A stretch of 64,000 bases of DNA from Magallana gigas. Taxonomy: Eukaryota. The stretch's first letter is position 1; every line of letters starts with the position of its first letter. Made by a program: the position numbers and the translations under genes. Under the pieces are notes generated by a model. It saw only the letters and a program-made list of their open reading frames with translations. It had not been told where the DNA came from and did no database searches. The stretch is taken from positions 50,964,001-51,028,000 of the forward strand of contig NC_088854.1 of NCBI RefSeq assembly GCF_963853765.1, given 5' to 3'. Below are positions 13,146 through 34,270 of the stretch, in pieces.

Positions 13146-13500
13146 TGTAGAACAACAATGTAGGATTGAATGAATTCTGATTGGAAGTGTATAAATACAA
13201 CAAAAGCTGTGATCGAGGTTCGTAGAACAACAATGTGGGATTGAATGAATTCTGATTGGAAGTGTATAAATACAACAATAGCTGTGAGGTTTGTAGTACA
13301 TGTACAACAATGTGGGATTGAATGAATTCTGATTGGAAGTGTATAAATACAACAAAAGCTGTGAGGCTTGTAGAACAACAATGTGGGATTGAATGAATTC
13401 TGATTGGAAGTGTATAAATACAACAAAAGCTGTGAGGTTTGTAGTACATGTACAACAATGTGGGATTGAATGAATTCTGATTGGAAGTGTATATGCATGC
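13146..13500. repeat. Minisatellite, five ~70-78-bp units
   Basis: Repeated ACAACAATGTGGGATTGAATGAATTCTGATTGGAAGTGTATAAATACAACAAAAGCTGTGAGG. It accounts for the three overlapping repetitive ORFs at 13095-13599. Confidence 0.9.
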
Positions 13501-14365
13501 ATGAATACAAAAAAAAATGTGAGGGTGTTCAAACAGTTCTATGGAAGACGCTAGAGCAGTAACAATATAGTACATGTATACATGTATTGTAAAAACCAAA
13601 ATGGTGTAATTTACATGTGTATCTTAGCTATACATGATTGTATATGCAAGAAAATATAAATGCATACATTGATAGTACATTGCAAGGATATAAATTTAAA
13701 AAATAATATCATAATCAATGTTCCTACTAGAATATAAAGTTTTGGTCTTGCAACATTAGGTGTTTGTGTATTAACTGTCTTGTTAGCTCAAATTATCCAA
13801 GTACAAGCTAGGATAAAAATGTACACAACCAATTTGCTGATATACTGCTGAATCATATGAAATATTTGGGGCTGGTTTTAATTGATTATTTATTTAATGT
13901 TTGAAAAGTTCATTAGAATGTAAATTTGTGAATTTGTTTAGGTAAATTGATAAAGATATAATTCGTTGAGACGTCACAATTAATATGATAAGGGTTCTCA
14001 TGAATATCACAGAACTTTATCCCGCAGAAAATTTAAGCTAATGATTCCAGAGTAAATGTATTTCTAAAATAAAACTAAATTCATGGACATTTGTTTATGT
14101 TTTAAAAAAAAGAAATAATCATCATATATATTCTTAGAATACAAAAAAGTGTCTGTTTATATTAGCACATATTAAATGAGTAAAGTGCTGATTGACAAAT
14201 GTGCTGAATGGTAGATAAGAAAATAATTTATGTTTTATCTTTTTTTAAGCATGGTTTGTTTCACAAGACACTGGTAAACCCTAACTATTGTAAAATGGCT
14301 AAAGGAGGGCTGGTTTTGAATATCAAATTTTAATGTTTTTGCACCATAAACTCGGATAAAAGGAA

Positions 14366-17300
14366 TCATCTATGTTCTTCATGAATGTCTTTGCGGGACA
14401 ATAAAGGAAGAATCTTGACTATGAGGGTTTGGTCCGCCATAAGATCATAGACATCATCAAGCGAGGTATCACTGATGTTGAATCCATTTACTTCTAATAT
14501 CTCGTCGCCTACATTAAGTAGTCCGGCAAAACGTTCATCAGCATCCGCCTCTTCCGAAAATCTTGAAACAAAGATTCCTGTCCAAAAGAAATTATTTAAT
14601 CATAAAAGATAATTGAAGGAAATAGATTATCAAGTTTTTAATTCTTGACAATAAGGATTTTGAATTCAAATAAGTACATAATGGTACATGGAAAATGTTA
14701 ACAAGATGTTAACAAGATTTCGTTGATTTCGTTCTTAAGTTGATCCACGAAATTAAGTATTCATTGAAGTGCAATTTCTATTAAAATTTTGTATTGATAG
14801 GGTCATTGGCCATGAATTTATGTATCCTTGTAACTGTGATTTTCACTTTATCTTTATCCATGAAAATTGATACCCTTGAATATTAATGAAACCACAGTTT
14901 ATGAAGTATAAGTATACCAAATATAAGATAATTATTAAAAAATCTACTATCAGAGTTGTAGTTATCTCCCTTATTTAAAGAGTGTGCTACCATTAAGCAT
15001 ATAGAAGAAGTATGAATATATACACAAATCTTGAATATTAGATTTGAATATTCATAATCTCCCTTATTTAAGAGTGAGCTTCCGTTTAGCATATATAAAA
15101 GAAGAATGAATATATTTATACACAAAACTATTATAGTTCTAGACTATTACAAAGAAAAGGATGTTAACTATAGAAGCTTCTTGTTTGTAATAAAAGCTAT
15201 CAGTTGGGAAAGAATAACTCAAGTCTAAATAGTACCACAATGTATCACCCTGTCAAACTACATGTATAGTTAAGGAAACTATCTCACATCTTCTATTGTA
15301 CCTATATATCCCTATGAAATGCTTCATTCAGAGATAAGTTGTGAAAAAGGTGAGTGAAACAATTCTAACTTCTTTCAAAATTTGTCATTGACTATGGTAT
15401 CTTTAGTTTTCATAAACACAAAACATTTGCAAATCAAAAGTGACAAAAAATCATGTGACTGTAAAATCTGTAACTTGTTAGATGAACTTAAGATACCAAA
15501 ATCACCAAAAAAAAAGAAACAGAGCACCAATAAAAACTGCATTCACAACCTAACTACTTACCAACTCCAAGAAACCGTCACACACCTTGGAAATTTAAAA
15601 CAATTCACTTTACCGTTTTTATGTTTGTTTGAATTTTTATTGTTGAACCATTTTCAGTAAAAAGGGTCAGAGTATAAGAATTCAAAATATGTATCAATAT
15701 ATACATCAAACTGCTTTTTTTAATACATGTACAGAGTTTATGGTATTAAGTTTAATAGGTCCTTGCAAAAACAAGTTCCACTTATTTAGATTCAATAGGA
15801 AAGTTGCTCTTGTCTAAATATACATACAAATAGTTTTTTCAGCTTCCTAAAGATATTCAATATACAGTTCATACACGTCCATGTTACGGATATGATTATC
15901 CCGGGGTTTTTAGAATTCCTGCAGACTTACCGTGTTTGAACTGAGTGCTCCCCCTTGCAATATAGAATCCGATTGGTCCTTTGTGTCTCCTGTTAAGCTC
16001 CACTGTCTGGGTCCCATCAGAGTGCACCTCCCTGAGCTGACTGACAGAGACCTCCTCCTCCGACGTCCTGGACTCGATAGAACTACATGGACCAGTCACT
16101 AACTCTTTGTTTGTTGACTCCATTACACCTCTGAAATTAATTTTAATTTTATCAGTGGTTATAAATGGTATAAATGTACTACTTATTTGTCACACTGTAG
16201 TGTAAATCATGTGATTCATTAATGCTTCAAGACGATGTTGAGCATGCTGCAGATATTTATCAGTATATAATAAGATAATTATTTTCAAAAAATAGGAAAT
16301 AATTTAAAGAATCTTAGATGTCTCAAAAAATTCATCACTGAATATGTATATACATGTACTAAGAAGTTTCAGTTTTAAGTTAATATCATATATCCTTATA
16401 CTAAAACAAGTATTTGTAATGAAATGAAATACTATTTACCCATGCCCAGAAAATTCTGCTGATTTATGTTTGGTACTCCTTCTTGCAAAGAATTTCTTCA
16501 GGGACCTCCCTTTCTTGGGTTTTGGAGGTTTCCCTTGCGGTGGAACATCCGAGGGGAATTCCAGTTCCTCTGGTCTAAATTCCCCCTGAGTTTTGTTGAT
16601 GCCTTTGTCCAGACTCACCGCCTTCCGCAGGGTCTTAAACTTGCTCTTTGCTGCAGCCTTAAAGTTGCTCATCTTGTTTGACAGGGATATCCTGGACCCA
16701 CTAAGCTCCTTGCTTTTGGACAAGTTGGTGGTGCTTCTGTTTTAGATATATATACACACAGGTTTAAATACACCAGAACTTCTAAATGCATGACCATTAG
16801 TTGGTTTCAGCAAAATGTGGTAAACAATCAGAAAACTAGGTGAAACTACTTTAATATTTCTTGTTGCTAAGTATAACTTTAAAATTAAAATAATACCATA
16901 AAATGATAGTCAATTACCCATAATTCCTGACAGGAAGGGGAGGAACATCCTGATTGTTGTTGTGAGAAGTTCCTGCTACATTGGGTGTACTCTGTGAGAC
17001 TTCTCGACTCAGCATTGATCCACATTCTGCCCCACTACTGGTAAAACTGTACGCTCTATCATCATGAGGTCTAACCCCCTCCTCTGGACCATTTAGCTTA
17101 CCCTTCTCAGTCTCTGAATCACCCATGTCTAGTTTTCTGTTCACACGCTTCACCTTGGCATAAATGGGATGAGAGGTATCAGACTTATCTTCCTTCCTGT
17201 CTCGTCTTTGATCAACTATAAAATCAGTCAAACATCTCTGTCATATTAAATTTTCTATCATATAACCATGATAATGAAAAAAATCTAAACATTTTTATGT

Positions 17301-20300
17301 TCCAAAATAATTTTGTAATGTTACAATCAATGTCTTTAATATAAAAAGACCCAATATGTTTTAACATTTGTTTCAATTTAATGGTCTTATAATTTTTTTT
17401 TTTAAATATTCATATTACATGTATTCAGTAACACTAAAAAGCAATGCATGAATTTTAACCTGTTATAGCAAGTTGTCTGATGCCTTCATCATCTGAGCAT
17501 ACAACAGTTGCATAGTCAGAATCCTGAGGATCATATATGTCCTCCATCAATCCAGTTTGTGGTCCAGCATTGTCCTGAAAAACATGGTTATTGTCCGATT
17601 CCAAAGAGAGGTCGGGAGAGCCAGAAAGAGGCTCTGAATTCACAGACTCTGGTAAAGAAGCTGACGATTCTCTGCTGACTGACACATAGGTCTTTGTCCC
17701 ATTCTCTCTAGATTTATTTTTGATGTTCATTCCCTGGTCATCTGATTTTGGATCTTTTTCAAATGTTAGAGGCGTAGCAAACACATTGTCTGAATCACTC
17801 TCAATTATATCTTCTACATCTAGACCCAGTCGGTCCATCTTGATCACGGAGGCTTCGTATGGCGTCAGTCTCTCTGGTCCTGAGAGGCTGGAACTACCTG
17901 TATCAACCTCTTCAAGATGTCTAACATGATCCTCATTTAAATCTGCTTGCTTAAGATCTTTCTTAAACTGTTGCTTCACTTCTGGTTTGGTTAAACCTGA
18001 CCTTGAAGGGTCTTCATCATCAGAGGACAAACTTTCGGTGGAGATACAGTCTTTACAGTCTTCAGAGGTAGTTGGTGTTTTCTGTAAGCGATGTTTGTGT
18101 GTGAACTGATTGTCAATGTCTGCATTGAGGGCTATCTGGGAAGATATGAGTGTCTTTTCAGAATAATCAGAATCACTAGACCCAGACAGTTTCCTTGAAT
18201 GTCTTCTGATCTCCTGCTCAAGTTTAGGATTGAACTTGAATGCACCATCATCACGAAAGAAGGCTCCTGGCTCTGACTTCTCAAGAAGAGAACTCTCTGA
18301 TTTACATTTGAATGTTTGAACACTCTCTCTTCTCTCTTCTCTTTTTGGATCAACAGGGTCGAAGTTGAAAGTTTTATCTGTTCTCCTTGGTGTACACAGT
18401 ACTGAAGCATTGCTGCCACTAACACAGTTCTTCCATGTTGGGGCACTATTGGCCCTTGCTGTTAAGCACCGTTTCACTATCTTGTATGGAGTTGGCTTTT
18501 TTCGTTGCTGGTAGACTTCTCGAACAAATAAATCATCTTCTGTGATGGTTGGAAGCCCAAGACTGGGGTCTGAGTCATCAACTTCCTCCTCTTCTTGCTG
18601 GTGCACAGACCTAAACTGGTATCCTGACAATACAGGATTGTGTTGAATTTCTTGAATTATGGAATCATCATCACTATCTCTTCTCCTACAAAATACAGTA
18701 CAAAGGGTATGTTATATAGATATACTAGAGGCATACTTAGATTATCTTTCAATTTAACACAGACTAAATTCATTGTTCATTTTCGCAAGGTGATACAGTA
18801 CTTCTATCAGTGGACATTCTGGTACTGTAGGTCTTTAAACCGAGGAATTAATATCCATGTAAAATTCAGAGAAGTACATCTCTAGGATTTTAAAGCCTCG
18901 CTTTTTTTTTTCAAAGAGATGTAAACTAAATGTACTTATGATAAAAATTATGCATTCGTGATTTAATATTTTTGCGATTTGATGCAAAACGGTTCAATTG
19001 TGGAATTAAATATTCGCGTAAAATAAGGAATCTATAGGGAATCTACAGCATGCTTTCCCAAAGATTTTTCTTATTTTGATGTAAAACTTTGGATTTACAA
19101 TGCCACAACCCAACAGCCATGCAAAGCTAACAAACGCCCTTTTTAAAGTCGATCATTACCTTGATTTCTTGGAGCCTGCTTTATTCCACATTCCTAGAAA
19201 TTCCAACTTGTCTGGTGCTAACCCTTGGTGACTAAATTCAACAGCAGACATCGGTCTACGAGATGAGTGATACTCTTCCCACATAGAAGCCCTTAAATGG
19301 AATAACAATGCATTAGACATGTAATAATGATCAATACTTTGTTAAGTAGTGCAATATCAAAGCTACCCGTTATGATAATTTAGACTTTTGGTCTGTGTGG
19401 TCTGAAAGAGCTGTATTTAAGAATAAATTGGTATTATATAAATAGCTCTACCTTGGCCCAATTTGAAGAATTTACAATGTTACCTTAAATACTTATTTTT
19501 GGGGAAAGTGAAAAGGATTTATTTTTTCACAAGTGTCATGTAACCCCAACCTAATCAATGACAGATTTTATAATATATCCACTTCCAAGAAAAGAGATAA
19601 AGAATTTGCATGTCTAAGGTTCATTGAGGGCAGAAACATTGGAATTCATAATATACCAGTAAATTCTCCATTACCCTCTGAAAATCTACTTATATACAAG
19701 GTACATGTATATACAGTTGTGTTTGAAAATTCTTACCATGCAACAACTCAAAAGAGACTGATAAAATTTAAAATATAATAAAAGAAAACTAAAAAAGAAA
19801 TTCATCTTTCCTATTTTCAAAATCATCATACATTTTGATGAATAATCATAATTAATGATTTAGAAATCATAAAAGCTTAATTAATTCTTTTTGTATTGAA
19901 TACTCCATATAAAATTCTAGCTCATATGGCATCCATATCAACCTATCATGAATTTATGCTCAATCTAATATTGTACAACAATAGAAGGTACTTCAAATAG
20001 CAGACACAAGAAGCCAGTTTAGCAGACAGACAAACTAAAAACATTACTGGTAAATAGAAATGTCTTAATTTCTTTTAAAAATCAAAAACCAGATAGAACT
20101 AAACTGATATACATTCAGCTATATTAATTTAAATGTTAAGCTTGCTACATAAAGAGTAAAAAATTTATCAAAACTTAATGAGATGTAATCACTTTCAAAT
20201 TACTAGAACATGACAAAATAAACTAAAACAAGACATCTCAAATGTTTATATTTCAAATGTGCTGTAAAATCAAGGGTCATTAGTTCTTGCAGACAGAGAC

Positions 20301-23300
20301 ATAGAAAACTGACTCCTCCGAAGATGTTTCTGGTGGCAACGAATCAGAAAGATAAGATACGTACCCGTTGTAGAGGTCTCTTCTGGATTTATCCGACCTA
20401 GTTCTTGGTAATGGCTGAGCGATGCCCGAGTCCACATCTGAATCTGTAGAAAGAGAGTACATTGAACTTGAGAAGAATACATCTCCAGAACTCGATCACG
20501 TCACCACGTTTGTATGTAAACATTTCTAGGACACATCAATCTTATGACTAGTCAATGATCGTTAAATCATAAAAAATGTATGATTGATGTATTTCTCTCA
20601 ACTTTTAATATTTCACTACATGTTAATTGATTTGAGATACTTCATAAAATAACTTATGTTCCTCTATAAACAACCACCCCCCCCCCCCCCCCCCCCAACA
20701 AATTGGAAGCAATTTATTAGCACAATACTAATTCATATACTTCAAACCAATTAATATTGAAATGAAGTGCAGAGTTCTACGACACATAAATCACCTTAAT
20801 TTGCTGCATCATAAGTTTAGTGAGTCATACACCATACTGGTATTATGGTAATTGGTATGGAATAAAGTTTGAGTTACGAACTGACAGGTAAAAATTGTGC
20901 TGATGGATTGCAATTTTACTTGAACTTAATTCATACCTAAACCTCTTCTAGTACATTGATAAAATAAAAACAAACATAAATCAAATTGAATGTACCATAT
21001 ATTTGAAGGGGTGGTGGAGGCATTTTATTAAATAATATAGCTCTCTTTCTATGATTTTAAATTCTATTTATCACACATCAAAAGCACATTAAAATTGCAC
21101 TCAATTTAAGCCCATGAAGTATAGTGTAAACATTTGGAGTACCATATAGATCCTCTGTTTATTACATTTCGCTGCCCCTGAGACTGGAAATGTTGTATTC
21201 TTTTCCAGTTAAGGAGGAACCCTACCAATATATGTGCTATGACAGCCTTTTCTATCCAAACAATGAAATCAAATGATTTAATATAAGATGTACACAAAGA
21301 AATACATCTGCCACCACCTCCCCCTTTTTCCTCCACCTACCACTGCATGCTGCACTCTTGATACTGGCTATGCTTGAGTTTTATTTCCCTCTAAAAGTGT
21401 TTGTTGCAATTAAGTGAACCTCCCATCAAGAAAATCAAAGCAAACTATTCAAACAAATTACAAGCAATCTCTGTTACCAAATTCTATCCTACTGATTGTA
21501 TGTTAAAACCTTGTTTGTGCAATTTAAAGTTTTAATTTGTCCTTTGAGGGAGTTTTTAACCCAATTTGGATTCCTTTTAGGTCTTTATCAATGTAAAAAA
21601 TGTTGTCAAGTTCTTTTAATCAATGGCATTTAAAGAATCAGCTCCTATTTTTAATGACACAAATAAATTAATGGATTGCAAGGATAAATTCTCAAGGGAA
21701 TTCTCAATGATATCACACTAACATCTTAGAAATATGTTATGATTCAATGCATATTTTATCATGAAGTGTGACAATTTTGTATTTCAATTACAGGTATTAA
21801 TAATTCAAATCACAAAATTAATATTCTTAAATATTGGGAGCTATAGAGTCATACAACAATTTACATTAATATATTGAACATTTGAAACTGGCATTACAAA
21901 GTTTTGAGAAAAACCAATATAACTGCTAGTTTTTTCCAATATTGTTGTAAAAATTTCTGACACGTACTTTTCAAAGAAGAGATGTTTATAAATTTAAACA
22001 AAGAGAAATTTTATATAGGATGCCTATTATTTCATTTGATCCCTGTGGGAAAATGTGCCTAGAAAACAAAGAGTTGATACCTGGTGCTGCTACATTGTAT
22101 AGATAAAACACGGGACTCTCAATATTGATTGGAGCCATTATTGATGGACATGCCGATACCTAACATTCTGTCTGATAAGCTCCCCTCTAAAATATGCCAT
22201 TTATGGGTAAATATCAATAAGATTATTTACCTGTCGGCTAACCAAACAAAACCAAGCCCTCAAAACAACACCCCTAACGGACAATGTATGTAATGCGGGC
22301 AAATCTATACATCTATTTAACGTACCAGAGCTATTCTAAGCTTTTATGTTAACTTCTGGCTTTCTTTTGGCTTCGAGATATGTTGCCTAAACAGTTTATA
22401 CAATCTGTACCCATTCGTCTACAACAACATTGACTCCAGATTTTGTTTGACGTTAAAAAAAAGATTTTAGATTCTTGCAGTGTTTTGAAAAACTAAACAC
22501 AAAGTCAGTACTATATTTTAGGAATAAGTTATTATTGAAAACCCTAATCTCCAACCAAGGACCACTAGAAATCAATGAAAAACCTAACAAAAGGTATCAA
22601 TGACAGGTGTAAACCCAGGAAATTTTTGAGTGATAGATGGCAAGGGTGACTCTAGTGCAAATAGATAATGTTTTAACATATCTTTGAAATGGAATATTGG
22701 TATGATATTTTGCATGGGCCTTTTGGAATATTTGTTAGATCTTTTTGTAAACATCAAGGTTTAATGCTGTATGTGGTATATGTACAATTTCAACTTATAG
22801 TGACAATATATCTACGTAAAATGATTATGCAAAGTGTGAGCAACATTTAATTCAAAATTTGATGAGGCATCAATGAAATTTTGTGAAAACAAAAAAAAAA
22901 TAGTACACAGTTACTCTACCTTTGTTGTAGTTAAGCACCATGTTGTCATTCTGCTGTTGGTATCCTCCGGCATAACTCCATCGTTTCTCTTGGCGCAAAA
23001 TGTCTCGATTCCCATGCCCACCATTTGTTTCAAACAGAATGTTGTTGTTCCTAGGGGATAGGTGTGTTGGTCCTAAGTTAGAGGACTGCACAGAAGAGGA
23101 ATCCAGGTCAATGGCACTATCTGGAGGAGAATCCGGACAAAACGCTCGCCAGTGAGAAGAGTCCGTAAAGGCACTACCAGTAATTTGTGGAGATTCCAGT
23201 CTGGATCTGTAACTTTGAAGTTGCTTTTCTTTCTTCTCAAGTTCAAGTTCCAACAATTTAATTCTCTCTGGAGTATTATCACTCTCTGAATAACTGGCTC

Positions 23301-25216
23301 TATGATTTCTTACTTGAGATTTCAATTCACCATTATTCTCACCAAACCTATGACCATAAGATGTGACATGAGACAAGGACCTTGGGAGAGAACTACCTCG
23401 AGTAGCACCATATTCGGAATGTCTTTCAGCTCGGTCTAAAATCAGAGATGGAGTAGGACTTGTCAAACATGATCTTGGGTGTCGATGGTGTCCAAATATC
23501 TTCTCCATTTCTCTGTCCCATTTTGTCACATGCATCCTTTCTGAACTGATACTCCTAGCATCATCATCATAATGAACTTCATCATCAAAATGCACATGTA
23601 GTCCAGAATTGAACATTCGTCTTGAAGGTCTCCTGGAATCATTAAGAGTTTTTCTATGAAAAGAATGGGGATATCTGTTATACAGACATTGGAAGTAATC
23701 TGAATTCATCCCATTCTCATCATGACTGCCTTTTCCAATATCTCGTCGTTTATTTTTCAAATCCTGCAAGTAAAAGAGAACATTTATTTTGAATATTAAC
23801 TGATGCACTAAATATCACTAACTTTAACTGTACAAGATACATATATATCTATATTGCCTCCATGCATTCATAAAAGCTATAAAGTAACAGAAATGTCATG
23901 GTTCAAAATGATACAGACCAGGACTGTTCTGTCGTACTAAATATTGGACTAAATTACAGTGTGATGCTGTGAAGTTGAATTAGTACATTGATTATATATA
24001 CACCAATAATATATACCTATCACAGTGACTGAAACTGCCTCGGGCAATTCTGACAAGGTGCAAAATGATTCATCAGTATAAACACAGCATATTTTGTATA
24101 TACATGCGCATGCATTAATATAAAAAGGAAAAGGTAAATCTCTCTCTCTCACTCTCTCTCTCTCATTACACACACAGACTTATACAGAATTCGAAGAAAT
24201 AAAATCAATTAACATTAATTTTAATCAGGTAATAAAGGCAATCATTTGTCCATTATATTATAAATGCATGTCAATTAATTAGAGTTTAGATGATACTAAG
24301 TGCTAGTATATACACCAAAGTAGATATCTCTACAAAGAATTTTCTCATTAGATCCAGTCATTGGCTATGCAATTTGCATATGATGAAATATAAATGAGAT
24401 AAAACAAAATATCATATCAAATGACAGACACTCTAGTGTTTCCGTTCATGTGTGTGAGAACATGAATATAACATAAACAGTGACTATATATATAATTATT
24501 ATCATACAGATATGTTAAATTCCAAAGCATTCCAAATGCAATGTATGTTTTCACATTTAGTTCGAGGAAAATATATGATTAAAAAATTTACATAATTAAG
24601 TTGTTGTAAGACATGTAAATGTTTTAATACTGGTTAAATCTAAAACAATGAAGATTGATATGTTAATCATGTTGAGTGTATCAATGAGTTACAGGTGTAT
24701 CACACATTATATATAAAATTCAGTACATGTACATCCTCTCCCCCGCATTATTTTGATATTAACCTACAGTTAAAAAAAAAGTGATGTTCACATTTGCACA
24801 ATCAACATCATAATAATCTTTTATCATAAAAGTATAACTTCAGTTCTGAATCTGCTATTTTGTCTGTAAGGTGAATTGCAAATATGTAAACATTCTATAA
24901 TAAAATGCATGCAGGCTAACATCTATTATATTTTTTATATTAAATCACACATATATACCTGTAATGATTTCGATCGCATTGCATAGTTTTTGCTCTTGCT
25001 TCTTTCTCCAGCTTCACTTGATAGGTCTAAACCTGAAGGATCGGCTCCATGTACGAAAGGGTTCCCACCCTGATCGTGCTGGTCCCCATCAATAGATTCC
25101 TCCGGTTTCTTTGACGAATTGTCAGTTCTTTTCCTAGCAATTCTACCGGACTTTATTAGTTTATCGTAGTACGACCGGTGTGTGGGAAGCCCATTGTTTA
25201 ATCTCAATTCATCCAT
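14366..25216 (-). CDS. Large low-complexity protein (~1156 aa) with C-terminal Par6-like PDZ domain; KIAA1614-like
   Basis: Exons 25216-24959, 23763-22920, 20443-20365, 19291-19160, 18610-17460, 17215-16918, 16736-16440, 16130-15931 and 14577-14366 (3471 nt, open frame). PDZ: TVELNRRHKGPIGFYIARGSTQFKHGIFVSRFSEEADADERFAGLLNVGDEILEVNGFNISDTSLDDVYDLMADQTLIVKILP. The acceptor of the 1.15-kb exon was chosen on phase alone. The KIAA1614 assignment is from memory of its PDZ and from synteny. Confidence 0.8.
18823..19050. mobile_element. ~230-bp MITE family with TACTGTAGATTCCT-type TIRs (other copies ~8412-8530 partial, ~31545-31766, ~56966-57193)
   Basis: Copies share GATTCCTTATTTTACGCGAGTA...AGATGTACTTCTC..GAATTT..GTGGATATTAATTCCTCG...AGGAATCTACAGTA blocks and TA termini. 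Confidence 0.8.
22081..22138 (-). CDS. Candidate alternative first coding exon of the PDZ gene (MAPINIESPVFYLYNVAAP)
   Basis: ATG at 22138, open for 58 nt to G|gtatc. Its phase-1 end matches the acceptor at 20443. Confidence 0.4.
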
Positions 25217-25936
25217 TGTGTTATTCAGTTTTGACAATTATCACAAGTCGACAGGTGCGCGAAAAATCTCGAGTGTTGATAAAGTTTTTTTTAGAAATCC
25301 TTCACATATCCAGCAGGTTTCTGTTTGAATCTGTTGTATAAGTGGAAATACTGTGCCATATCGTTTTCATTTGGGATAGCACACACACCGCGGATCTTAC
25401 ACTTTTCCTTATTTCATTGATTTTTAAGCTTACACTTCTAGTCATTCAACCATATTCAACAATGTGACCCATCTTTGTAAGCTTTGTGTAGTAACCTTCA
25501 AACGTCACGGAATTTTGTGAACACAGAAATCGATGACGTTTAACCCTGTGTAAACACAAGACAAGCACTTGGCTCACTGCTGTTTGTTCCTCAAATAAAA
25601 AATCAAAAGTTCAGCCTTAATACAAAGACAATGTTTCGGATATCCGGCCGTCTTAGTCAAAGATCGATTTTTGTTTGGTACGTATGAACGATTTGTCTTT
25701 ATCTTTTTCTGAAAAAAGATGACAACTCTCTAGCTTAATGTCACAGTAGCCTGACTCCGCTGTTACTGTATAGTAATACAGCTACTGTAGCTGTCGATGA
25801 TTAACATAATCAGTGATCAAAATAACAAGAAAAACTGAAGAGAATGATTTAGAAAAAAATCCATACATAATTTTTTTCATTGATGTATGTTTTTGCTTTT
25901 TCAGATTAATTTATCAGGGTTGAATATCAGAAGACA

Positions 25937-28900
25937 ATGAAGTTTGCAGAACATCTTGGTGCCCACATCACACCAGAGTGGAGGAAGCAATACATACAGT
26001 ATGAGGTATGTCAGTAGGTAATGAAGTCAGTGGGAATATTAATACATGCAGATCTGTAAATGATGCGTTAACAGGGATGTATATATGTCCCTTGTGTTAA
26101 AAATAGTATTGGATATTAATATGTACAGCTTATTTATAGATGGGGACATAATTATAGATGTACGTAAGGAATGTGCCGACACATGCATTTATTCATACAA
26201 ATATAAGCTGGGTAGGGACGGCTTATGCTTTAATTTTAGTTCTCAAATTCATGCAATTAAATATTTGCAAACAGATATTGAATTAAACCAGGGACATATA
26301 TACTAAGATGGGTATATATGCCCCTGTTCAGATTTTTTAGAAAAAGCAAAAAAAAGATCAAATTTCTTGTAGTTAATGCTAAAAATTAATTGTTTATATT
26401 GTAGGCCATGAAAGAAATGCTTTATGAAGCTCAGGAGCAAGCACCCTCCCCAGAAGGTAAAACTAGCATTGAATATTCAATTATCTTAAAAGTTTATAAA
26501 GATGTGAACTGCTGTGTTGGATTTGATTGTTCGGCATAAAAAATATATTAACTTCAAATCACATGACCTACATCATTCTAAAGATTTTTTTCATCATCCA
26601 TAAACCTAGATTGTGATAATTTTATTTTCTGTAATGAAATGGTGCTCTACCACATAAATATCACTCATAAAAGATGTACTGTCCTATTATGTAGGTCATC
26701 CAAAATTGAATAAATAGCTGATCTTGACACAATCTGATTAAAATCAGATCCTTGATTTGCTCCTTTTATTGTCGGTACATGAGGAGATCCTCATATAGTG
26801 ACAATAAAAAAGAAAGAGGGGATTGAAGATCTGATGTGTACCCATAGTGACAATGAAAAAATAAGCAGTGGGTCGAGGATTGGATGTGTATAAGGACAAT
26901 AAAAGAGTAAGGAGCGGATCGAGGATCTTATTTTAATCAGATTGATCTTGAAACTGATTAAAACTAAACGCTGAGTATAAACTATTATAATCTATTTGAA
27001 AAATTTGATAAATTATTTTTATCATTATAGTGACAGATGAAAGCACCATTCACAGATTTCTTGCCAGATTTGATGAACGCTTTTTCCAGTTCTGTGACAA
27101 AGAATTATCCAAGATCAACACCTTTTTTTATGGTAAAAAGTTACTTTTCAAATTCCAAAAGGCTATCATTCATTAATTAAGATGACAGCATTTTGATGTT
27201 ATCAATGTTTTACTTTGAAAATGATTCTAGTGAGATACATGTGTGTCATAGAAATATACCAGTAGCTGAGCAAACATGATTCTTTTTTTTCATAACAGAA
27301 AAAATATCTGAGGCCAATAGGAAATATGCTAGTTTAAAAGCCGAATTGGAGGCATACAATGAACACTCAGCCAAACCGTCCACCCTGGGGGGACTTCGTC
27401 ATCGCAGACAGAATGGAGTGTACGCTCTGTTCAAGGACAAAGAGAAGCAGGGAATATCCCACGCCCGGAAACACAACGACCTGAAGCTGGCCTTCAGCGA
27501 GTTTTACCTCAGCCTCATTCTCCTCCAGAACTACCAGAACCTCAACTTCACAGGGTTCAGGAAAATCCTCAAAAAACATGACAAGGTATAGCGGCTTCAT
27601 CTATCTGTTTTTCATTAGGAGCATGACATAAGTGTTGAATATTTTGCTTAAGTTTGTTCAAGAAATATTTGTGCATCTTAGAGTAAATGTCCTTATATTG
27701 ATTGCCTTTTGTACCGGTAGACTTGTGTCAATATCTTACGTAACTTTTGGATCTATTATGTATAGTTTTCTATGCATCATATGAAATAGAATTTGTTATG
27801 CATAGTCATGAGAAATTGATTTTTCCCAAAGCTTAAAATAGCTCACTAATTTCAATATTGTAGCTTATGCAGACACAGCGGGGTGGTGAATGGCGTCAGG
27901 GGAATGTTGAGACAGCCCCTTTCTATACCAATAAAGAGGTGGATCATTTAATCAAGGAGGTGGAGGTGTGTATGTTTCACAGATGGACAAGAAGTTATTG
28001 AACTATAGAGCCTAAACAAGCATGCCGTATTGTAAATTATTTGAAATACATTCATCACATGCACCAAGCTGTTAAACATATCAGTACAGGTACATGTAAT
28101 TGCGTGTACAGTATTGGAACTTGTTATTTACTTAATAATTTTTTTAAATTAATAATAAACCAGTGGCCATCTTTTATATCAAAATGATGGTTTTATTTTT
28201 TAAACACGAAAACTACCATATTTCCTTTCTAATACTGTAAACGTGGTGATTTTGACGACGTGTAAATTTTGACTATATTGACAATTTTTCTCGTCAAAAT
28301 TTTCACTTATCAATCTTCAACTATGGTCAGAAGTGATCAAATCCAATAAAGCCCGCAGGGCGTTATGATAGATTTGATCACGCCCAACCCTATTTGATCA
28401 CCTCATACTATTCAAAGAATGATTCCTTATTTCTTATATTGATATGATTTCAGCCATAATGAGATTAGATAGTAAAATAGTCATTCATGAAATGTATTGG
28501 TCAATACATTACAAAATCAATTTGTAGTGTTATTGCATACAAGGACACTGGAGAATGTTTATATATAATATGATAAATAGATTTTAAGCATCTACTTTGC
28601 AGAGTGTTGTAACAACAGACTTAGAGGGAGGTAATAGGAGTAAGGCCATGAAGCGGCTGAGGGTGCCACCTTTAGGTGAAAAGGTAACTATTCATCATTA
28701 TTTGAAACATTGCATGGGCCCAGCTATGTGGCATCATTTCAGATCTCTTTCTTCCAGTTTTTGACAAAACATTACTATTGACACGTGCTTTTGTTTGTCG
28801 TCAGCTGTATCTTCCTCCTTAAGGTAATGTGACATTCAGTACCTATATTGTTTGTTACTTTGTCTGTAGATGGATAGACTTTGAAATATTCTTTATGCAT

Positions 28901-31900
28901 GATTTATATTTTAAAGACTTTGATAAGTAAATAAAATTAGAACAGCCTACTAACCTAGGATAAGCGGAAGACAGTTAATACATATAACTAATCGACGGGA
29001 ACATTAACACATTTACATCACACAAGAAAAACTTTTGTTTTCATGTATATGGATTAATGACAGTTGAATCTTTTTTGTAAGAAAGAGTATGAAAATTATG
29101 CTAAAAAATCAATTGAAGTAATATGTGTAAAAATGCCTCATTTCTGTTTCAGCAAAACCCATGGACAACATTTCGTGTTGGATTGTTTTCTGGTTGTTTT
29201 CTAGTGTTAACAGTCTGCATTATAATCACTGGTAAGTGTGTTATTATATTGGTAAGTTTGTATTGTAATAACTCGAAAGTTAGTAGTACGTGTCATCAAT
29301 TGATAAATCATTAAGGTAAAGTCAGGTAAACTTAAAATGCATTCAATGGTAAGTCTGCATTATAATACTGAAAAGTTAAGCCATTGTAATCACTATTAAT
29401 TCTGCTTGTAATCACTGTTAAGTCTGCATTGAAATTTTTGCCCATGGTAAGTCTGCTTTGTAATCACTGTTAAGTTTGGTAGTAATCAATGTTAAATCTG
29501 GTAGTAATCACTGTTAAGTTTGGTAGTGATCAATGTTAAATCTGGTAGTAATCACTGTTAAGTTTGGTAGTGATCAATGTTAAATCTGGTAGTAATCATT
29601 GTTAAGTTTGGTAGTGTTCAATGTTAAATCTGGTAGTTATAAATGTTAAGTCTGGTACTAATCACTGTAAAGTCTGGTAGTTATAAATGTTAAGTCTGGT
29701 ACTAATCACTGTAAAGTCTGGTAGCAATAACTGTTTAGTCTGATTGAAATAACTGTTAAGTCTAGTCAGGGACATATATACGTCCCTGGTCTAGTAGCTA
29801 TCACCATTGAATAGAGTATTAATCTTTTTTAAGTTTTCCAGTAAATTCTGTTATGCCACATAGTAATCACTATTTTTTCTGCTAGAAATTACTATTACAT
29901 GTATGTCTGTTTTGAAAGCACTGGTAAGTCTGCTAGTATTGTGTGTTACAGTACTGGTATTTCAGTTGTAGAAGTTAGCCCTGTTTTTTCTGTTAAAAGA
30001 GATTTTTGATTATTTATTAAATTGCTATGTACCGGTAATTAGATACAGGAACCTTTTATCAAAGTTTGATCTGTAGTTTGTTCCCTATTAACCAGCAAGT
30101 TACCTGTTAAGCTACAGAACGGGATGTTTAATTCTAGTAAAGCATGTACTTGTCTCATGTAAGACATCATAACTTTGCTCAAAAATAATCTCATGCAGAA
30201 AAAATTTGATGGTTAAAAAAAAATTCATAGTGACCAATGATAATATTATGCATCAATGTTTGATAAGCTTATACATTATCTAATTTTTATAATGACCAAT
30301 CAACAATAAACTTAAGATAGACAACCGCCACTTGTCTAATGTACAAGAATAAAATAAATGGACTATATCATCAGCAAATACACATTAGTTACTTCGAAAA
30401 TAAATCAAATGTGATAGTTTTATATTTATCTGGATGTATGTTATACCTTGACTTAGTTGATTCTTAGGCATTTTTGGGTGGTTTGGTCGTGCAATATTCA
30501 CCAGTTTGTTATTTATGTATGAATGATTACCATTCTCTGACTCTATTTGCTAAGAGTATGTGTGACTTTGCTTTAAACAACTGTTATTCAATGCTCTTTT
30601 TGTAGGATTTTCATTTAACTGTATATTCAATCATCATTAAGACATTTAACTTCCCTGTAAATGCTTTAAATAGTCGGACAAATTTTGTTAGGATGCATTT
30701 TTGAATTACATTTAACTTTCATCACATTCACGTTAAAGTGATATATATTGTTTTGTATACAGCCATATTTCCCCTTGATGACACCCTGAAGTGGGATACT
30801 GCAGTACAGATGTACAGAGGCCTATTCCTTGTTATTCTCATCATCTTTCTCCTTGGGATCAATACTTACGGCTGGAGGTCATCTGGGGTCAATCACGTTC
30901 TAATATTTGAGATTGACCCGAGACATCATCTATCTCACCAACAATTACTAGAGGTACAACATGTAGCAAAGTGAGGATAAAAAAAGATGATAAAAGGAAA
31001 ACTTATTTATAAAAGTTGAACATTGGTGAGAGAACACAAAGTTATTAAAATACACCGTCTAAGCAAAATATGATATTTGATGCATGATTTATAAGATGAT
31101 GTAAAATGATGCTTACATAATTGATACATATAGCTTATCATAATTATTTTTATCGGTATGCATGTTCAAGTATTTATTGGCCATTATCCCATGATGCATG
31201 AATTTGGCTTATTTATTAAGAATGTTCATGATACATTGCTTAACAGGCTCTATGTTTGACATATTATCGGGACTTGTATTGTTTTGACAGTTGGCCTCCT
31301 TTCTGGCTGTGCTCTGGGCCCTGAATGTGCTAGCCTTCCTGTACAGTAAGTTCATCCACATCCCGCCCTATGCCTGTCCCCTGGCTCTGGTAATATTCCT
31401 CATCCTGTACCTCATCAATCCATTCCCGATTCTCCACTACAGCTCAAGGATGTGGCTGCTCAAGATTCTGGTAAGTGGAAGCATTTCACAAGCTGCTAGG
31501 TACTACAAATGTAATCACAGCAAAGAAACACTATTGTACCATGCTACTTATGGAAGATTCCTTATTGTACGCGAGTACTCAAATTCTGTGATTAAATCGT
31601 TTTGCATAAAATCACGAGAACATAAAATTAGGAACACCTTATTTTTAGCATGTTTCATAAAAATTACACATGATGTAAAATCGAAAGCGAGATTTTAAAA
31701 TCTGCGAGATGTACTTCTCCTGAATTTGCGTGGATATTCCTTGCGTTTAATTAGGAATCTACAGTATATGTTCTCAGTTTCAGATGTGTTTCAGATTTGT
31801 AGCATTTACTTGCTCTCAAATGCTACATATTTTTTGGTCCCAATTATAAAAGTTCTTATCTCTACGTTTCCATTATTTCCACCAATATCGTTGTCGTTTT

Positions 31901-34270
31901 AGTTCCACATTCTGACGGCTCCATTCCACCACGTTGGATTCGCTGATTTCTGGCTGGCTGACCAGTTAAACAGTCTCTCCACAGTACTGCTTGACTTTGA
32001 GTACATGGTCTGTTTCTATGGTTTTGAGGTGAACTGGCTGCCAAATCCTGACAGTATGTAATATAAACCCCATACTTGAATGAAAGGGTGATGAATTTTT
32101 CTTGAATTAGGCAAATTAATTTATTTTTGCATATGTTAAAATCAATTTTTGTTAAATTCTAATACACAGAACATTTAAAATTGTTAAGTTATTATCAAAT
32201 CTTCTTTAATTTGTAATCCATATGCATTTTACGTAATGGAAAAAAGTTTTAGCAGTATAAATGCTGTTATGACATACTCTGTACTTATATAAAAATGTAA
32301 TACAATTTATGTAACACAAACTGTAAAGTTCTACTCTGATCTCTAAAATGAAGACAAGAGCAATCTAGGAGCGGACAATAATTTACAGTTATAAATACCA
32401 TTTATTTGCATGCTTTCTGTATTTTTCCAGCTTCTCATGTCTGTACGAAGAATGTGTATTCCGTCGTTCTGAGGGCCGTTATAAGTTGTCTGCCAGCGTG
32501 GTGGCGATTTGCTCAGTGTTTACGACGTTACCGAGATACCAAGATGGCTTTTCCCCATTTAGTGAACGCTGGAAAATATTCAACCACATTCTTTAATGTT
32601 TTGTTTTCAACACTTTACAAAGTAGAAACAGGTAAATACAAGGACAATACAAATACAGTTTCAAAAATTGATTATTACTATAAAATTAAAAATCAAGTAT
32701 TAAAAGCATAAAATAGTTTAATTGATATTTATTTACTCATTAAATTTACTCATCAAATTTTTTTTCAACAATGACAAACTTTAAACTTAAAATTGTAGTA
32801 AAGTTTAAAACTGTTAAATGTTAAGCGTGGAACTCCTTGCATCTATAATTCTATATTCAATAACTTTATGAATTAGAGCATTCTTGCTTTTACAGTTGTT
32901 AATGATAACCAAGGATCTATGCAAAACCATGCCTTCTTTTTCCTGTGGATTGCTTTTGCGATCATAAGTTCTTGTTACACTTTGACATGGGATCTTAAGA
33001 TGGATTGGGGATTGTTGGATTCCAATGCAGGAGAAAATAAATTTCTACGAGAGGAGGTTGTTTATGCGTACAAAGTAAGACATTTTTTCCTTTTAGCTAG
33101 TTGAAAGCATGTAATTAACACATTGTTTGTCATTGAATAGATATGATAAGATCTGCTATGTAAAATGGTCATCCTTTTCACAAATAATTTACATGTACAA
33201 GGTTTCACTTGGATTTACCGATACTCTGCTTGCAGGCTTACTACTATTTTGCGATAGTAGAAGACTCCATCCTTAGATTTGTGTGGACTCTCCATGTATC
33301 ATTAGGGGAAGGTATTTTGTTTCAACAGAGGGAAGCTCTCACAACTATATTAGCATCTTTTGAGGTATTCAGGTAAGTTTGTCTATACAAATTAAGAGAG
33401 ATTTGGGTTCTCATTTGTTTGGGTTGTAATTTTATTATGAATTGTACTTTTATTGAGTTGCAGAATTTTTACATTTCTTACTACATTCAAGTCAATCATT
33501 ATTGACATAATCTATACCTAATACAATGGGAACATAATCACTTAAAATATATTTACACATAACAGGAAGCAATTACATGTATCAAAAGTATTATATCACT
33601 CTGGTCTCATCCTCATATTTTAATTAACAGGAGATTTGTTTGGAACTTTTTCCGGTTGGAAAATGAGCATCTCAACAACTGTGGACAGTTCCGAGCAGTG
33701 AGGGATATTTCTATCGCTCCAATAGACTCAAACGACCAGAACCAGTTGGAGGAAATGATGGACGAAGATGATGGAGTATTTACATATCGTAGTGAAAAAC
33801 GTAAACTCTTGTCAAGGTAGGAATTTATATTCTGCTTATCCCTATTTATGTTTTCGTATGTCATAAAGCTTTGTTTTTTATTTCTTTTCACATAAAATTG
33901 TGGGTTTTTGGCTTTTTTAACCAGTTAACAAATACATGTACAAACACCAAAATTATCATAGTTAAGTTCTAGTAATTGCAGGCTGGTCTGCTTGTAAAAA
34001 CTGTTTATGGATGATTTCAAAATACTCAGATCTTTATACGCTGGCCGATTTTATTTCAGCAACCATAAGAGGAGGTATGACGTGTATGAATTGGAGCATG
34101 AAAAGCATGCTTTATTGGGGCATAACATATATGCCTTTCTTAGTTATTGTAACATGAACTTCCATCAAATGCTTGTTTCAAAGCATGCTACTTCGTTCAG
34201 TTGCCTTTTGTCAAGTAATACCCATGTACTGATTTAACTTATTCATAGCAATTCAGATGATGAGATATAG
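25937..34270 (+). CDS. XPR1: Xenotropic and polytropic retrovirus receptor 1 / SPX-EXS phosphate exporter (SLC53A1)
   Basis: Exons 25937-26005, 26405-26456, 27031-27132, 27299-27585, 27864-27965, 28603-28683, 29153-29231, 30763-30953, 31291-31470, 31903-32053, 32431-32631, 32896-33074, 33236-33372 and 33631-33816. Motifs: [68 protein letters not shown] and [27 protein letters not shown]. The terminal exons are uncertain; 34060-34074 plus 34249-34270 give ...SNHKRSNSDDEI* (677 aa). Confidence 0.95.
28805..28823 (+). other. Candidate 19-nt stop-containing micro-exon in XPR1 intron 6
   Basis: gtgcttttgtttgtcgtcag|CTGTATCTTCCTCCTTAAG|gtaatg, with an in-frame TAA at 28820-28822. Confidence 0.4.
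29345..29765 (+). repeat. Minisatellite of ~18-19-bp units (GTAATCACTGTTAAGTYTGGTA family)
   Basis: Directly visible tandem units in XPR1 intron 7; the first units resemble the exon 7 3' end and donor. Confidence 0.85.

What the first reader, a model, noticed from the sequence alone, without database searches (positions are those of the whole stretch)
14366..34270. KIAA1614-like PDZ gene sits head-to-head with XPR1, a pairing that also seems to exist in human
Seen in sequence: a nine-exon, ~1156-aa gene ending in a Par6-type PDZ (GFYIARG...GLLNVGDEILEVNG), whose ATG (25216, -) is about 720 bp from the XPR1 ATG (25937, +). Recalled knowledge: human KIAA1614, a poorly characterised protein with a similar C-terminal PDZ, is the immediate neighbour of XPR1 at 1q25, there in tandem orientation. 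Inference: this is a lophotrochozoan KIAA1614 ortholog. The linkage may then be ancestral to bilaterians and kept despite a change in orientation, hinting at co-regulation or a functional link between the phosphate exporter and an uncharacterised scaffold.
Basis: partly seen in the sequence, partly recalled or inferred. Interest (0 to 1): 0.7.

Follow-up and report, generated by a model that had tools for sequence, protein, structure and literature searches.

The report
Oyster KIAA1614 ortholog sharing XPR1's promoter
An oyster gene for a long, mostly disordered protein ending in a Par6-like PDZ domain is the ortholog of the uncharacterised human gene KIAA1614, and it shares a promoter region, back to back, with the phosphate exporter gene XPR1, an arrangement also found in mussel, a brachiopod and amphioxus.

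Summary
A nine-exon, in-frame, all GT-AG gene of 1181 codons lies on the minus strand (ATG 25216, stop 14366-14368). It ends in a PDZ domain split between exons 8 and 9. Its ATG is 720 bp from the ATG of a plus-strand XPR1 gene (SPX + EXS).

Stranded RNA reads confirm intron 1 and the exon 2-3 junction. They also show a non-coding XPR1 first exon, so the two transcription starts lie within about 200 bp of each other.

The KIAA1614 reading is supported by:
- collinear motifs outside the PDZ;
- a shared intron position inside the PDZ;
- a PDZ tree (97/93 support) that groups the invertebrate family with vertebrate KIAA1614 and away from PARD6;
- a profile match to the vertebrate DUF4685 region.

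The same head-to-head pair occurs in Mytilus (510 bp) and amphioxus (1.1 kb, with STX6 two genes further on). It occurs more loosely in Lingula. Papers give the human order XPR1-KIAA1614-STX6. XPR1 was not within 10 kb in a nemertean, an annelid, two hemichordates, a crinoid, a spider, a gastropod or a sole.

A protein-level link to XPR1 is untested. The family's C-terminus also resembles the Par6 semi-CRIB + PDZ module. Interest is moderate.

The parts
24959..25216 (-). KIAA1614-like coding exon 1 (86 codons from ATG 25216). The transcribed exon continues 5' to at least 25464.
   Evidence: Splice joint in RNA reads and contigs; the X1 contig runs to 25464 and is then followed by adapter. Frame check.
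22920..23763 (-). Coding exon 2. It carries the coiled-coil-like stretch and the DSPPDSAIDLDSSSV motif.
   Evidence: Joint 23763|24959 and a contig running off at 22920 into exon 3. BLASTP to mussel and scallop orthologs, E 1e-13 to 1e-33. Motif block.
20365..20443 (-). Coding exon 3, with the SDVDSGI motif.
   Evidence: The loose end of the RNA contig at 22920 reads into this exon. The motif is conserved from oyster to mammals. Splice sites.
19160..19291 (-). Coding exon 4, positional counterpart of the small exon that carries PLKADH in other phyla. The motif is diverged in oyster.
   Evidence: Canonical splice sites and phase. Exon order compared with amphioxus. No direct sequence match, so this is the weakest exon of the model.
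17460..18685 (-). Coding exon 5, a large Ser/Asp-rich, probably disordered central exon.
   Evidence: BLASTP to mussel and scallop orthologs, collinear. Splice sites.
16918..17215 (-). Coding exon 6.
   Evidence: Open frame with canonical splice sites in the right phase. No homology hit.
16440..16736 (-). Coding exon 7, with the conserved basic motif ..SLSNKMSNFKAAAKSKFKTLRKAVSLDKG..
   Evidence: 45-69% identity to the same motif in ten family members, always about 100-150 residues before the PDZ.
15931..16130 (-). Coding exon 8: the strand before the PDZ and the first third of the PDZ (..DGTQTVELNRRHKGPIGFYIARGSTQFKH).
   Evidence: The intron position is shared across phyla.
14366..14577 (-). 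Coding exon 9: the rest of the PDZ to the C-terminus, with the stop at 14368-14366.
   Evidence: Pfam PDZ, E 1.3e-6. phmmer against 1.84 billion proteins. Trees.
25465..25600 (.). Core of the shared, divergent promoter. Read strand switches inside this interval.
   Evidence: Stranded depth by 200-nt bin, and the X2 contig that runs unbroken from 24958 to 25677. CpG observed/expected is about 0.9-1.1 across 25000-25800, against 0.44 for the window.
25479..25540 (.). Conserved promoter block. A 20-nt stretch (25479-25498) is identical in Mytilus. It is followed by two inverted CRE-like half sites (ACGTCA at 25502-25507, TGACGT at 25534-25539) with the same order and spacing in Mytilus.
   Evidence: The 20-mer is unique in the 564-Mb oyster genome. 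The chance expectation for a shared 20-mer between the two intergenic regions is about 3e-7 (own arithmetic).
25550..25677 (+). XPR1 non-coding exon 1. The 5' end is approximate; the donor is at 25678.
   Evidence: Joint 25677|25905 in 15 stranded reads and one contig. Sequence.
25905..26005 (+). XPR1 exon 2, with ATG 25937 ([23 protein letters not shown]).
   Evidence: The 22 residues compared ([22 protein letters not shown]) match Mytilus 22/22, amphioxus 20/22 and Lingula 18/22, in each case at the head-to-head position.
26405..33817 (+). Remaining XPR1 coding exons. Spliced exons from RNA lie at about 26405-26456, 27031-27132, 27299-27585, 27864-27965 and from 28603. EXS exons span 30738-33373. 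The exon with [17 protein letters not shown] lies at 33656-33817.
Evidence: Pfam SPX and EXS. Joints.

Best explanation
The minus-strand gene is the single-copy oyster ortholog of vertebrate KIAA1614. It encodes a protein of about 1180 residues that looks mostly disordered and Ser-rich, with a few conserved short motifs and a C-terminal PDZ whose closest solved relative is Par6. It is transcribed divergently from XPR1. The two transcription starts lie within about 200 bp, around a small non-methylated-looking (CpG-retaining) region that holds a block conserved with mussel. The head-to-head XPR1/KIAA1614 pair dates back at least to the last common ancestor of protostomes and deuterostomes. I infer that it persisted because the two genes share one promoter region, so a break between them would damage both. 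It was nevertheless broken or stretched in many lineages. In vertebrates the genes stay neighbours, with STX6 next, as also seen two genes along in amphioxus. Shown: gene model, orthology, arrangement in four phyla, close divergent starts, conserved promoter block. Inferred: promoter sharing as the cause of retention, and co-regulation. Untested: any physical or functional link between the two proteins.
For: Gene model and RNA.

Family:
- Exon 9 alone retrieves 1000-1500-aa proteins with a PDZ at the very C-terminus from molluscs, nemerteans, a brachiopod, an annelid, hemichordates and amphioxus.
- The amphioxus C-terminus finds mammalian 'KIAA1614 homolog' at E 1e-18, 35% identity over 83% of 277 aa.
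- A Dreissena query finds fish, lizard and marsupial KIAA1614 homologs, all carrying PDZ + DUF4685, ahead of MPDZ.
- Collinear motifs appear in a 21-sequence alignment.
- hhalign of the invertebrate middle region against the vertebrate DUF4685 region gives probability 90.5%, E 1.4e-6.
- The intron inside the PDZ sits at the same place in nine other species, including sole, whereas oyster PARD6 has its PDZ in one exon.
- In the PDZ tree, the family plus six vertebrate KIAA1614 plus window exon 9 stand against PARD6 and the other PDZs with support 97/93. The AU test rejects vertebrate KIAA1614 + PARD6 (p 0.0125).
- Exons 8 and 9 together score 67-75 bits against vertebrate KIAA1614. The two other closest oyster PDZs score 38-52.
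- Only this locus matches strongly in the oyster genome.

Synteny: amphioxus, Mytilus, Lingula. XPR1's first coding exon was found at the expected spots. Human gene order comes from PMC8990796 and PMC10651736.

Promoter.
Against: - No XPR1 was found within 10 kb upstream in Lineus, Owenia, Ptychodera, Saccoglossus, Antedon, a spider, Gigantopelta or sole. The pair is therefore often lost, or lies beyond the 10-kb reach of the tool.
- Pfam DUF4685 does not match any oyster exon or any invertebrate member directly.
- The AU test could not reject window exon 9 (68 aa) + PARD6 (p 0.24). The oyster's own placement rests on the free tree, the summed scores and the motifs outside the PDZ.
- Exons 4 and 6 have no homology support.
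- Transcription starts come from low-depth reads and contigs, not from CAGE.
- A lizard KIAA1614 query searched exon by exon ranks another oyster PDZ first (31 against 29 bits), because the window's PDZ is split in two.
- Vertebrate orientation was not tested.
Confidence: 0.85

Rival explanations
1. The pair is kept because the proteins work together: the KIAA1614 PDZ scaffold binds or traffics XPR1, so co-expression from one promoter is selected for function and not only for promoter geometry.
For: The genes remain neighbours in human although the orientation is recalled to differ there, which promoter sharing alone would not explain. Both genes are expressed in the same two oyster RNA samples at similar depth.
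Against: There is no interaction evidence. KIAA1614 is called uncharacterised in the papers I opened, and no paper held linked it to Cdc42, CRIB or Par6. The pair is lost in many lineages that keep both genes. The oyster XPR1 C-terminus could not be defined, so no PDZ-binding motif could be checked.
Confidence: 0.12
2. The gene is not a KIAA1614 ortholog but a lineage-specific PDZ protein derived from PARD6 or another Par6-like PDZ gene, and the likeness to KIAA1614 is limited to a shared PDZ subtype.
For: PAR-6 is the closest solved PDZ. One amphioxus member is named 'PARD6A' by an annotation pipeline. The AU test does not reject exon 9 + PARD6.
Against: Collinear motifs outside the PDZ are shared with mammalian KIAA1614. 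The intron position, protein length and C-terminal PDZ placement are also shared. The tree and the AU test stand against KIAA1614 + PARD6. The oyster has a separate true PARD6 with CRIB and PDZ in one exon.
Confidence: 0.03
3. The XPR1 adjacency in bivalves and amphioxus is a chance or convergent rejoining, not inheritance.
For: The pair is absent within 10 kb in eight of the twelve lineages sampled.
Against: The same two genes occur in the same head-to-head orientation, with 0.5-1.1 kb between ATGs, in oyster, mussel and amphioxus. In Lingula the orientation is the same at 6.6 kb. STX6 lies nearby in both amphioxus and human. For two given genes among roughly 20,000, independent adjacency in the same orientation is very unlikely (own estimate).
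Confidence: 0.04

Closest known systems
Vertebrate KIAA1614 (Pfam DUF4685 + C-terminal PDZ; an uncharacterised protein of about 1100-1300 aa)
   Same: Length and a PDZ at the extreme C-terminus. Motif order is shared: SL..R...N....LL, then SDxDSGI, then PL[KR]A[DN]H, then K.K[KR].PSL.SL, then the strand before the PDZ, then the PDZ. The intron inside the PDZ is at the same place. XPR1 is the neighbour.
   Different: Pfam DUF4685 does not score on invertebrate members; only its first half is detectable, by profile-profile comparison. The oyster's PLKADH motif and the stretch before the PDZ are diverged. The orientation to XPR1 is head-to-head here and is recalled as tandem in human.
PAR-6 / PARD6 semi-CRIB + PDZ module (PDB 1NF3 chain C, 1RY4, 2LC6)
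   Same: It is the closest solved structure by sequence profile (62 bits, with the alignment starting in the semi-CRIB ISxPxxFRxVS) and by predicted fold (121-123 aligned columns, against about 86-90 for plain PDZs). The GFYI carboxylate-binding loop and the ..LEVNG.. helix region are also alike.
   Different: There is no PB1 domain. The PDZ is at the C-terminus of a long disordered protein, and it is interrupted by an intron that PARD6 lacks. The semi-CRIB-like stretch adds only about 3-4 bits of sequence score and is degenerate in bivalves, including this oyster. GTPase binding is untested.
Ancient conserved microsyntenic or bidirectional gene pairs in metazoans (surveyed by Irimia et al. 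2012, PMC3514665)
   Same: Two unrelated genes are kept adjacent across phyla. The divergent starts are close, in a short CpG-retaining interval.
   Different: I could not find this particular pair in any text held. That paper's supplementary lists were not available, so prior listing cannot be excluded.

Membership tests
KIAA1614 orthologous group | PDZ domain at the extreme C-terminus of a protein of about 1000-1500 aa | tested here: met
   The model has 1181 codons. The PDZ occupies exons 8-9 and ends 12 residues before the stop. Hits show the same layout.
KIAA1614 orthologous group | The PDZ groups with vertebrate KIAA1614 PDZs and not with PARD6 or other PDZs | tested here: met
   Support is 97/93 for family + vertebrates + window exon 9 against the outgroups. 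AU p is 0.0125 against KIAA1614 + PARD6. An HMM built from invertebrates only scores mammalian KIAA1614 at 80-86 bits, against 64 and 52 for the next oyster PDZs. Only exon 9 of the oyster was used, as a partial row.
KIAA1614 orthologous group | Pfam DUF4685 (PF15737) | tested here: not met
   No hit on any oyster exon at E <= 1, nor on amphioxus, mussel, acorn worm or Lingula proteins. The first half is detectable only by hhalign (probability 90.5%, E 1.4e-6). The Pfam model appears to cover vertebrate members only: all vertebrate hits carry it and no invertebrate member does. I treat this as a limit of the model and not as exclusion from the orthologous group.
KIAA1614 orthologous group | Collinear conserved motifs outside the PDZ | tested here: met
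   DSPPDSAIDLD (exon 2), SDVDSGI (exon 3) and the basic KSKFKTLRKAVSLD motif (exon 7) occur in family order. The oyster's PLKADH equivalent is doubtful.
KIAA1614 orthologous group | Shared exon-intron structure (phase-1 intron inside the PDZ after the ..KH/G position) | tested here: met
KIAA1614 orthologous group | Single best reciprocal match in the oyster genome | tested here: inconclusive
   A scallop query hits this locus first. A lizard query searched exon by exon ranks another PDZ (C7) slightly above exon 9 alone. Summing exons 8 and 9 restores this locus as best by about 20 bits.
PARD6 family | PB1 domain + semi-CRIB + PDZ in a protein of about 350 aa | tested here: not met
   No PB1 on any exon. 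The protein is about 1180 aa. The oyster's true PARD6 is elsewhere, at G000 C3.
XPR1 (for the neighbouring gene) | N-terminal SPX domain and C-terminal EXS domain | tested here: met
   Pfam SPX at E 2.4e-15. EXS on five exons, E 1e-9 to 3e-21.
Bidirectional-promoter gene pair | Opposite strands with transcription starts less than 1 kb apart | tested here: met
   The strand of stranded reads switches inside 25401-25600. One contig bridges both first exons. Exact starts were not mapped.

The most novel reading that the evidence does not exclude
KIAA1614 proteins are an ancient bilaterian class of scaffold whose C-terminus is a Par6-like semi-CRIB + PDZ switch. That would make them a second family of small-GTPase-regulated PDZ proteins. 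Their half-billion-year coupling to the XPR1 promoter would then reflect a working partnership with phosphate export, for instance polarised placement or turnover of XPR1.
Probability: 0.12. Interest if true: 0.75.

Novelty: new member of a known kind. Interest (0 to 1): 0.45.

Why it matters
KIAA1614 is a human gene with no known function. Showing that it has orthologs across bilaterians gives experimenters concrete handles. Those orthologs are currently labelled 'uncharacterized', 'SRRM2-like', 'dentin sialophosphoprotein-like' or even 'PARD6A'. They share a defined set of short motifs and a Par6-like module. The deep head-to-head link with XPR1 adds one well-documented case to the catalogue of ancient gene pairs. 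It also offers a small, testable promoter element (a 20-nt block plus two CRE-like sites) conserved between oyster and mussel. It does not by itself show a functional link to phosphate transport.

Tried and rejected
- Pfam on each exon gave only the PDZ; DUF4685 was not found.
- The exact-protein look-up of Mytilus isoform X2 failed because only the longest isoform is on record. Isoform X1 worked.
- No full-length oyster protein came back from either protein search. Only a 77-aa fragment with 85% identity appeared, so the model could not be checked against an annotation.
- The amphioxus N-terminal region found nothing in the oyster genome exon by exon.
- The supplementary lists of Irimia et al. 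2012 are not held. Paper searches for XPR1 + microsynteny and for KIAA1614 + CRIB/Cdc42 found nothing relevant.
- No sequence block of the oyster or mussel promoter is shared with amphioxus.
- STX6 is not near the oyster pair: same chromosome, 47 Mb away.
The oyster entered the trees as exon 9 only, and the structure was predicted from the amphioxus ortholog with a family alignment.
Full report
**What is in the window.**
The window comes from an oyster: RNA and DNA runs labelled as oyster hold it, and the genome is 564 Mb in 29 contigs.

On the minus strand between 25216 and 14366, nine open segments join through canonical GT-AG sites into one frame of 1181 codons:
- E1 25216-24959
- E2 23763-22920
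- E3 20443-20365
- E4 19291-19160
- E5 18685-17460
- E6 17215-16918
- E7 16736-16440
- E8 16130-15931
- E9 14577-14369, with the stop at 14368-14366

The PDZ is split by a phase-1 intron between ..GFYIARGSTQFKH and G/IFVSRF..GLLNVGDEILEVNG. Exon 9 alone passes Pfam's PDZ threshold.

On the plus strand, XPR1 is plain. It has an SPX exon and five EXS exons, and its ATG is at 25937.

**RNA evidence.**
I had one read-laying run and used it on 22801-28800, with two stranded poly-A runs and two sets of RNA contigs.
- It confirms intron 1 of the PDZ gene (24958-23764).
- A contig leaves exon 2 at 22920 and continues with letters that code SDVDSGIAQ, which is exon 3.
- Reads for the two genes lie on opposite strands.
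- XPR1 has a non-coding first exon ending at 25677, followed by a 227-nt intron. Its transcription start is therefore far closer to the other gene than its ATG suggests.
- PDZ-gene reads reach the 25201-25400 bin and thin out in 25401-25600. XPR1-strand reads begin in 25401-25600.
- One PDZ-gene contig stops at 25464 next to adapter sequence. Another runs unbroken from 24958 to 25677, bridging both first exons.

The two starts therefore lie within about 200 bp of each other, or overlap. This is a true divergent promoter, although the exact starts need CAGE. Exons 3-9 were outside the laid stretch and rest on homology and splice logic.

**What the gene is.**

Exon 9 (68 aa) was run against 1.84 billion representative proteins. 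Besides multi-PDZ proteins whose scores sum over many domains, it returned a clear class: proteins of 1000-1500 aa with a single PDZ at the very C-terminus and 50-60% identity. They come from mussel, zebra mussel, a vent snail, abalone, two nemerteans, Lingula, the annelid Owenia, acorn worms, amphioxus, spiders and a tick. Their database names are 'uncharacterized', 'SRRM2-like', 'dentin sialophosphoprotein-like' or 'PARD6A'.

The oyster's other exons match the same proteins in the same order. Exons 2 and 5 match bivalves only. Exon 7 matches members from most of these phyla through a basic motif, and exon 8 matches all of them.

The C-terminal 277 aa of the amphioxus member finds echinoderm members and mammalian 'KIAA1614 homolog' proteins (E 1e-18, 35% identity over 83% of the query). 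A zebra-mussel query finds fish, lizard and marsupial KIAA1614 homologs, all with PDZ + DUF4685, ahead of any other named family.

A 21-sequence alignment shows motifs shared with mammalian KIAA1614 in one order:
1. SLKERL..N...M.ELL
2. SDxDSGI
3. GPLKADHxIQP (mammals: QPLRANHDIVP, inside DUF4685)
4. K.KK.PSLRSL
5. A conserved strand just before the PDZ
6. The PDZ

Profile-profile comparison of the invertebrate middle region with the vertebrate DUF4685 region gives probability 90.5% and E 1.4e-6 over 60 columns. Both sets were anchored on the SDxDSG motif, so only the second motif is independent evidence.

The intron inside the PDZ sits at the same place in amphioxus, mussel, Lingula, Owenia, Lineus, Saccoglossus, Antedon, a spider and the sole KIAA1614 homolog. 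The oyster's real PARD6 has CRIB and PDZ in one exon.

The PDZ tree held 36 rows and 106 columns and was built with a careful search. It puts the invertebrate family, six vertebrate KIAA1614 PDZs and the window's exon 9 on one side of a 97/93 branch. On the other side are oyster PARD6, a second Par6-like oyster PDZ and domains of multi-PDZ proteins. An AU test rejects vertebrate KIAA1614 + PARD6 (p 0.0125) (an earlier version is).

The AU test could not reject exon 9 + PARD6 (p 0.24), because a 68-residue partial row has little power. The oyster's placement therefore leans on three things: the free tree, the motifs outside the PDZ, and summed scores. Exons 8 and 9 together score 67-75 bits against five vertebrate KIAA1614 tails. 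The other two oyster PDZs score 38-52.

A lizard query run exon by exon against the oyster genome ranked the other PDZ first by 2 bits. This is an effect of the split PDZ.

Pfam DUF4685 itself does not score on any invertebrate member. I read this as a model that covers vertebrate members only, since all vertebrate hits carry it and no invertebrate member does.

**The linkage with XPR1.**
I used exact-protein look-ups with 10-kb flanks. Positions of the XPR1 first coding exon come from a tblastn check.

| Species | XPR1 within 10 kb upstream? | Detail |
|---|---|---|
| Amphioxus | Yes, head-to-head | SPX+EXS gene on the opposite strand; ATGs 1124 bp apart; downstream a TsaD-family gene, then STX6 |
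| Mytilus trossulus | Yes, head-to-head | ATGs 510 bp apart |
| Lingula | Yes, looser | XPR1 first exon on the opposite strand 6.6 kb upstream, with a small PTPA-like gene model between |
| Lineus | No | Upstream neighbour is an EamA gene |
| Owenia | No | Upstream neighbour is a hydrolase |
| Ptychodera, Saccoglossus | No | Both have a GT25 glycosyltransferase head-to-head instead |
| Antedon | No | |
| Spider (Oedothorax) | No | |
| Gigantopelta | No | No gene called within 10 kb |
| Sole | No | Flanked by Roquin and an HLH gene |

The tblastn check also found no XPR1 piece in any of the negative loci.

Two papers list the human 1q25 genes in the order ACBD6, XPR1, KIAA1614, STX6 (PMC8990796 and PMC10651736).

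The same orientation with sub-1.2-kb spacing in bivalves and a cephalochordate, and STX6 close by in both amphioxus and human, make inheritance from the bilaterian ancestor by far the simplest reading. The frequent losses show that the constraint is not absolute.

**The promoter.**
The interval 25000-25800 keeps CpGs (observed/expected about 0.9-1.1, against 0.44 for the window). The oyster and mussel intergenic regions are otherwise hard to align. They nevertheless share a 20-nt identical block (window 25479-25498; L002 9820-9839). Next to it lie two inverted CRE-like half sites with the same order and nearly the same spacing (31 and 33 nt).

The 20-mer occurs once in the 564-Mb oyster genome. 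It sits exactly where the read strand switches. No such block is shared with amphioxus.

**How it most likely works.**
Shown: one short region drives two divergent transcripts, and part of it is conserved between two bivalve orders.

Inferred: a rearrangement between the genes would cut through both promoters, which slows the loss of the pair. This is the usual explanation for old bidirectional pairs (compare PMC3514665).

Both genes are expressed in the same two samples at similar depth. That agrees with co-regulation but does not prove it.

Nothing here bears on a physical link between the proteins. I could not define the oyster XPR1 C-terminus, so I could not look for a PDZ-binding tail.

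**A further point on the protein.**
A profile of the family's last 130 residues finds PAR-6B CRIB-PDZ (1NF3 chain C) as the best solved relative. The alignment starts in the semi-CRIB (family V-x-S-P-x-H-[FL]-R-x-[IV]-G-R-L-L against Par6 I-S-x-P-x-D-F-R-x-V-S-x-I-I).

An AlphaFold model of the amphioxus C-terminus (pLDDT 77.5) has an extra strand before the PDZ. Its two best Foldseek matches are Par6 CRIB-PDZ structures aligned over 121-123 columns, whereas other PDZs align over about 86-90.

The sequence gain from the extra stretch is small, about 3-4 bits. The stretch is also degenerate in bivalves, this oyster included. I offer GTPase regulation as a hypothesis only. No paper held links KIAA1614 to CRIB, Cdc42 or Par6. 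The only biochemical datum I found is a human KIAA1614 peptide that binds the USP8 rhodanese domain (PMC12057046).

**Verdict.**
This is a new, well-supported member of two known kinds: an ortholog of a known but uncharacterised family, and an ancient bidirectional gene pair. Interest is moderate.

Noticed in passing
window 46112-47402 (-) and 52580-53511 (+): A CAF1-family deadenylase gene (CNOT7/8-like) and a VPS37-like (Mod_r) gene lie head-to-head. From memory, CNOT7 and VPS37A are also divergent neighbours on human 8p22, so this would be a second ancient pair in the same window.
   Followed up: partly
G000:C7:8061337-8064585 (L010, ORF 376-1992 -): An intronless 538-aa open frame with an N-terminal Par6-like PDZ (..TLGFYIREGNG..GVFISRI..) and a long disordered tail. 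It is the second-closest PDZ in the oyster genome to the KIAA1614 family (64 bits), above PARD6. Its identity is unknown.
   Followed up: partly
L005 and L015 (Ptychodera, Saccoglossus): In both acorn worms the KIAA1614-like gene is head-to-head with a GT25 (COLGALT-like) glycosyltransferase instead of XPR1. From memory, human COLGALT2 is also at 1q25, which hints at reshuffling within one ancestral block.
   Followed up: no
G000:C2:4085484-4086202 and G000:C2:54244184-54244348: The oyster STX6-like and Roquin-like genes lie on the same chromosome-scale contig as the window (C2:50.96 Mb), 47 Mb and 3.2 Mb away. This is the same large-scale linkage as human 1q25 but not local synteny.
   Followed up: partly
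window 28333-28440: A short inverted-repeat element in an XPR1 intron has very high RNA depth, joints between opposite strands and many loose ends. It looks like a MITE-type repeat that is expressed from many copies.
   Followed up: no
window 7090-7980 and 13098-13623: Two stretches are open in several frames on both strands with repeating peptide-like words (..LTCNLFMSTCN.., ..IRIHSIPHCC..). They are probably tandem repeats and not genes.
   Followed up: no
window 2-358 (-) and 5872-11645 (+): The last exon of a PRP38-family splicing factor and a serine beta-lactamase-like (LACTB-like) gene lie downstream of the KIAA1614-like gene. Neither has a counterpart next to human KIAA1614.
   Followed up: partly
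protein databases: No full-length oyster product of this gene was returned by either protein search, only a 77-aa last-exon fragment (P0001, 85% identity).
   Followed up: no
L006 4925-6896 (Lingula): A 99-aa PTPA-like gene model sits between XPR1 and the KIAA1614-like gene. It may be a fragment or an insertion that stretched the shared promoter region.
   Followed up: no
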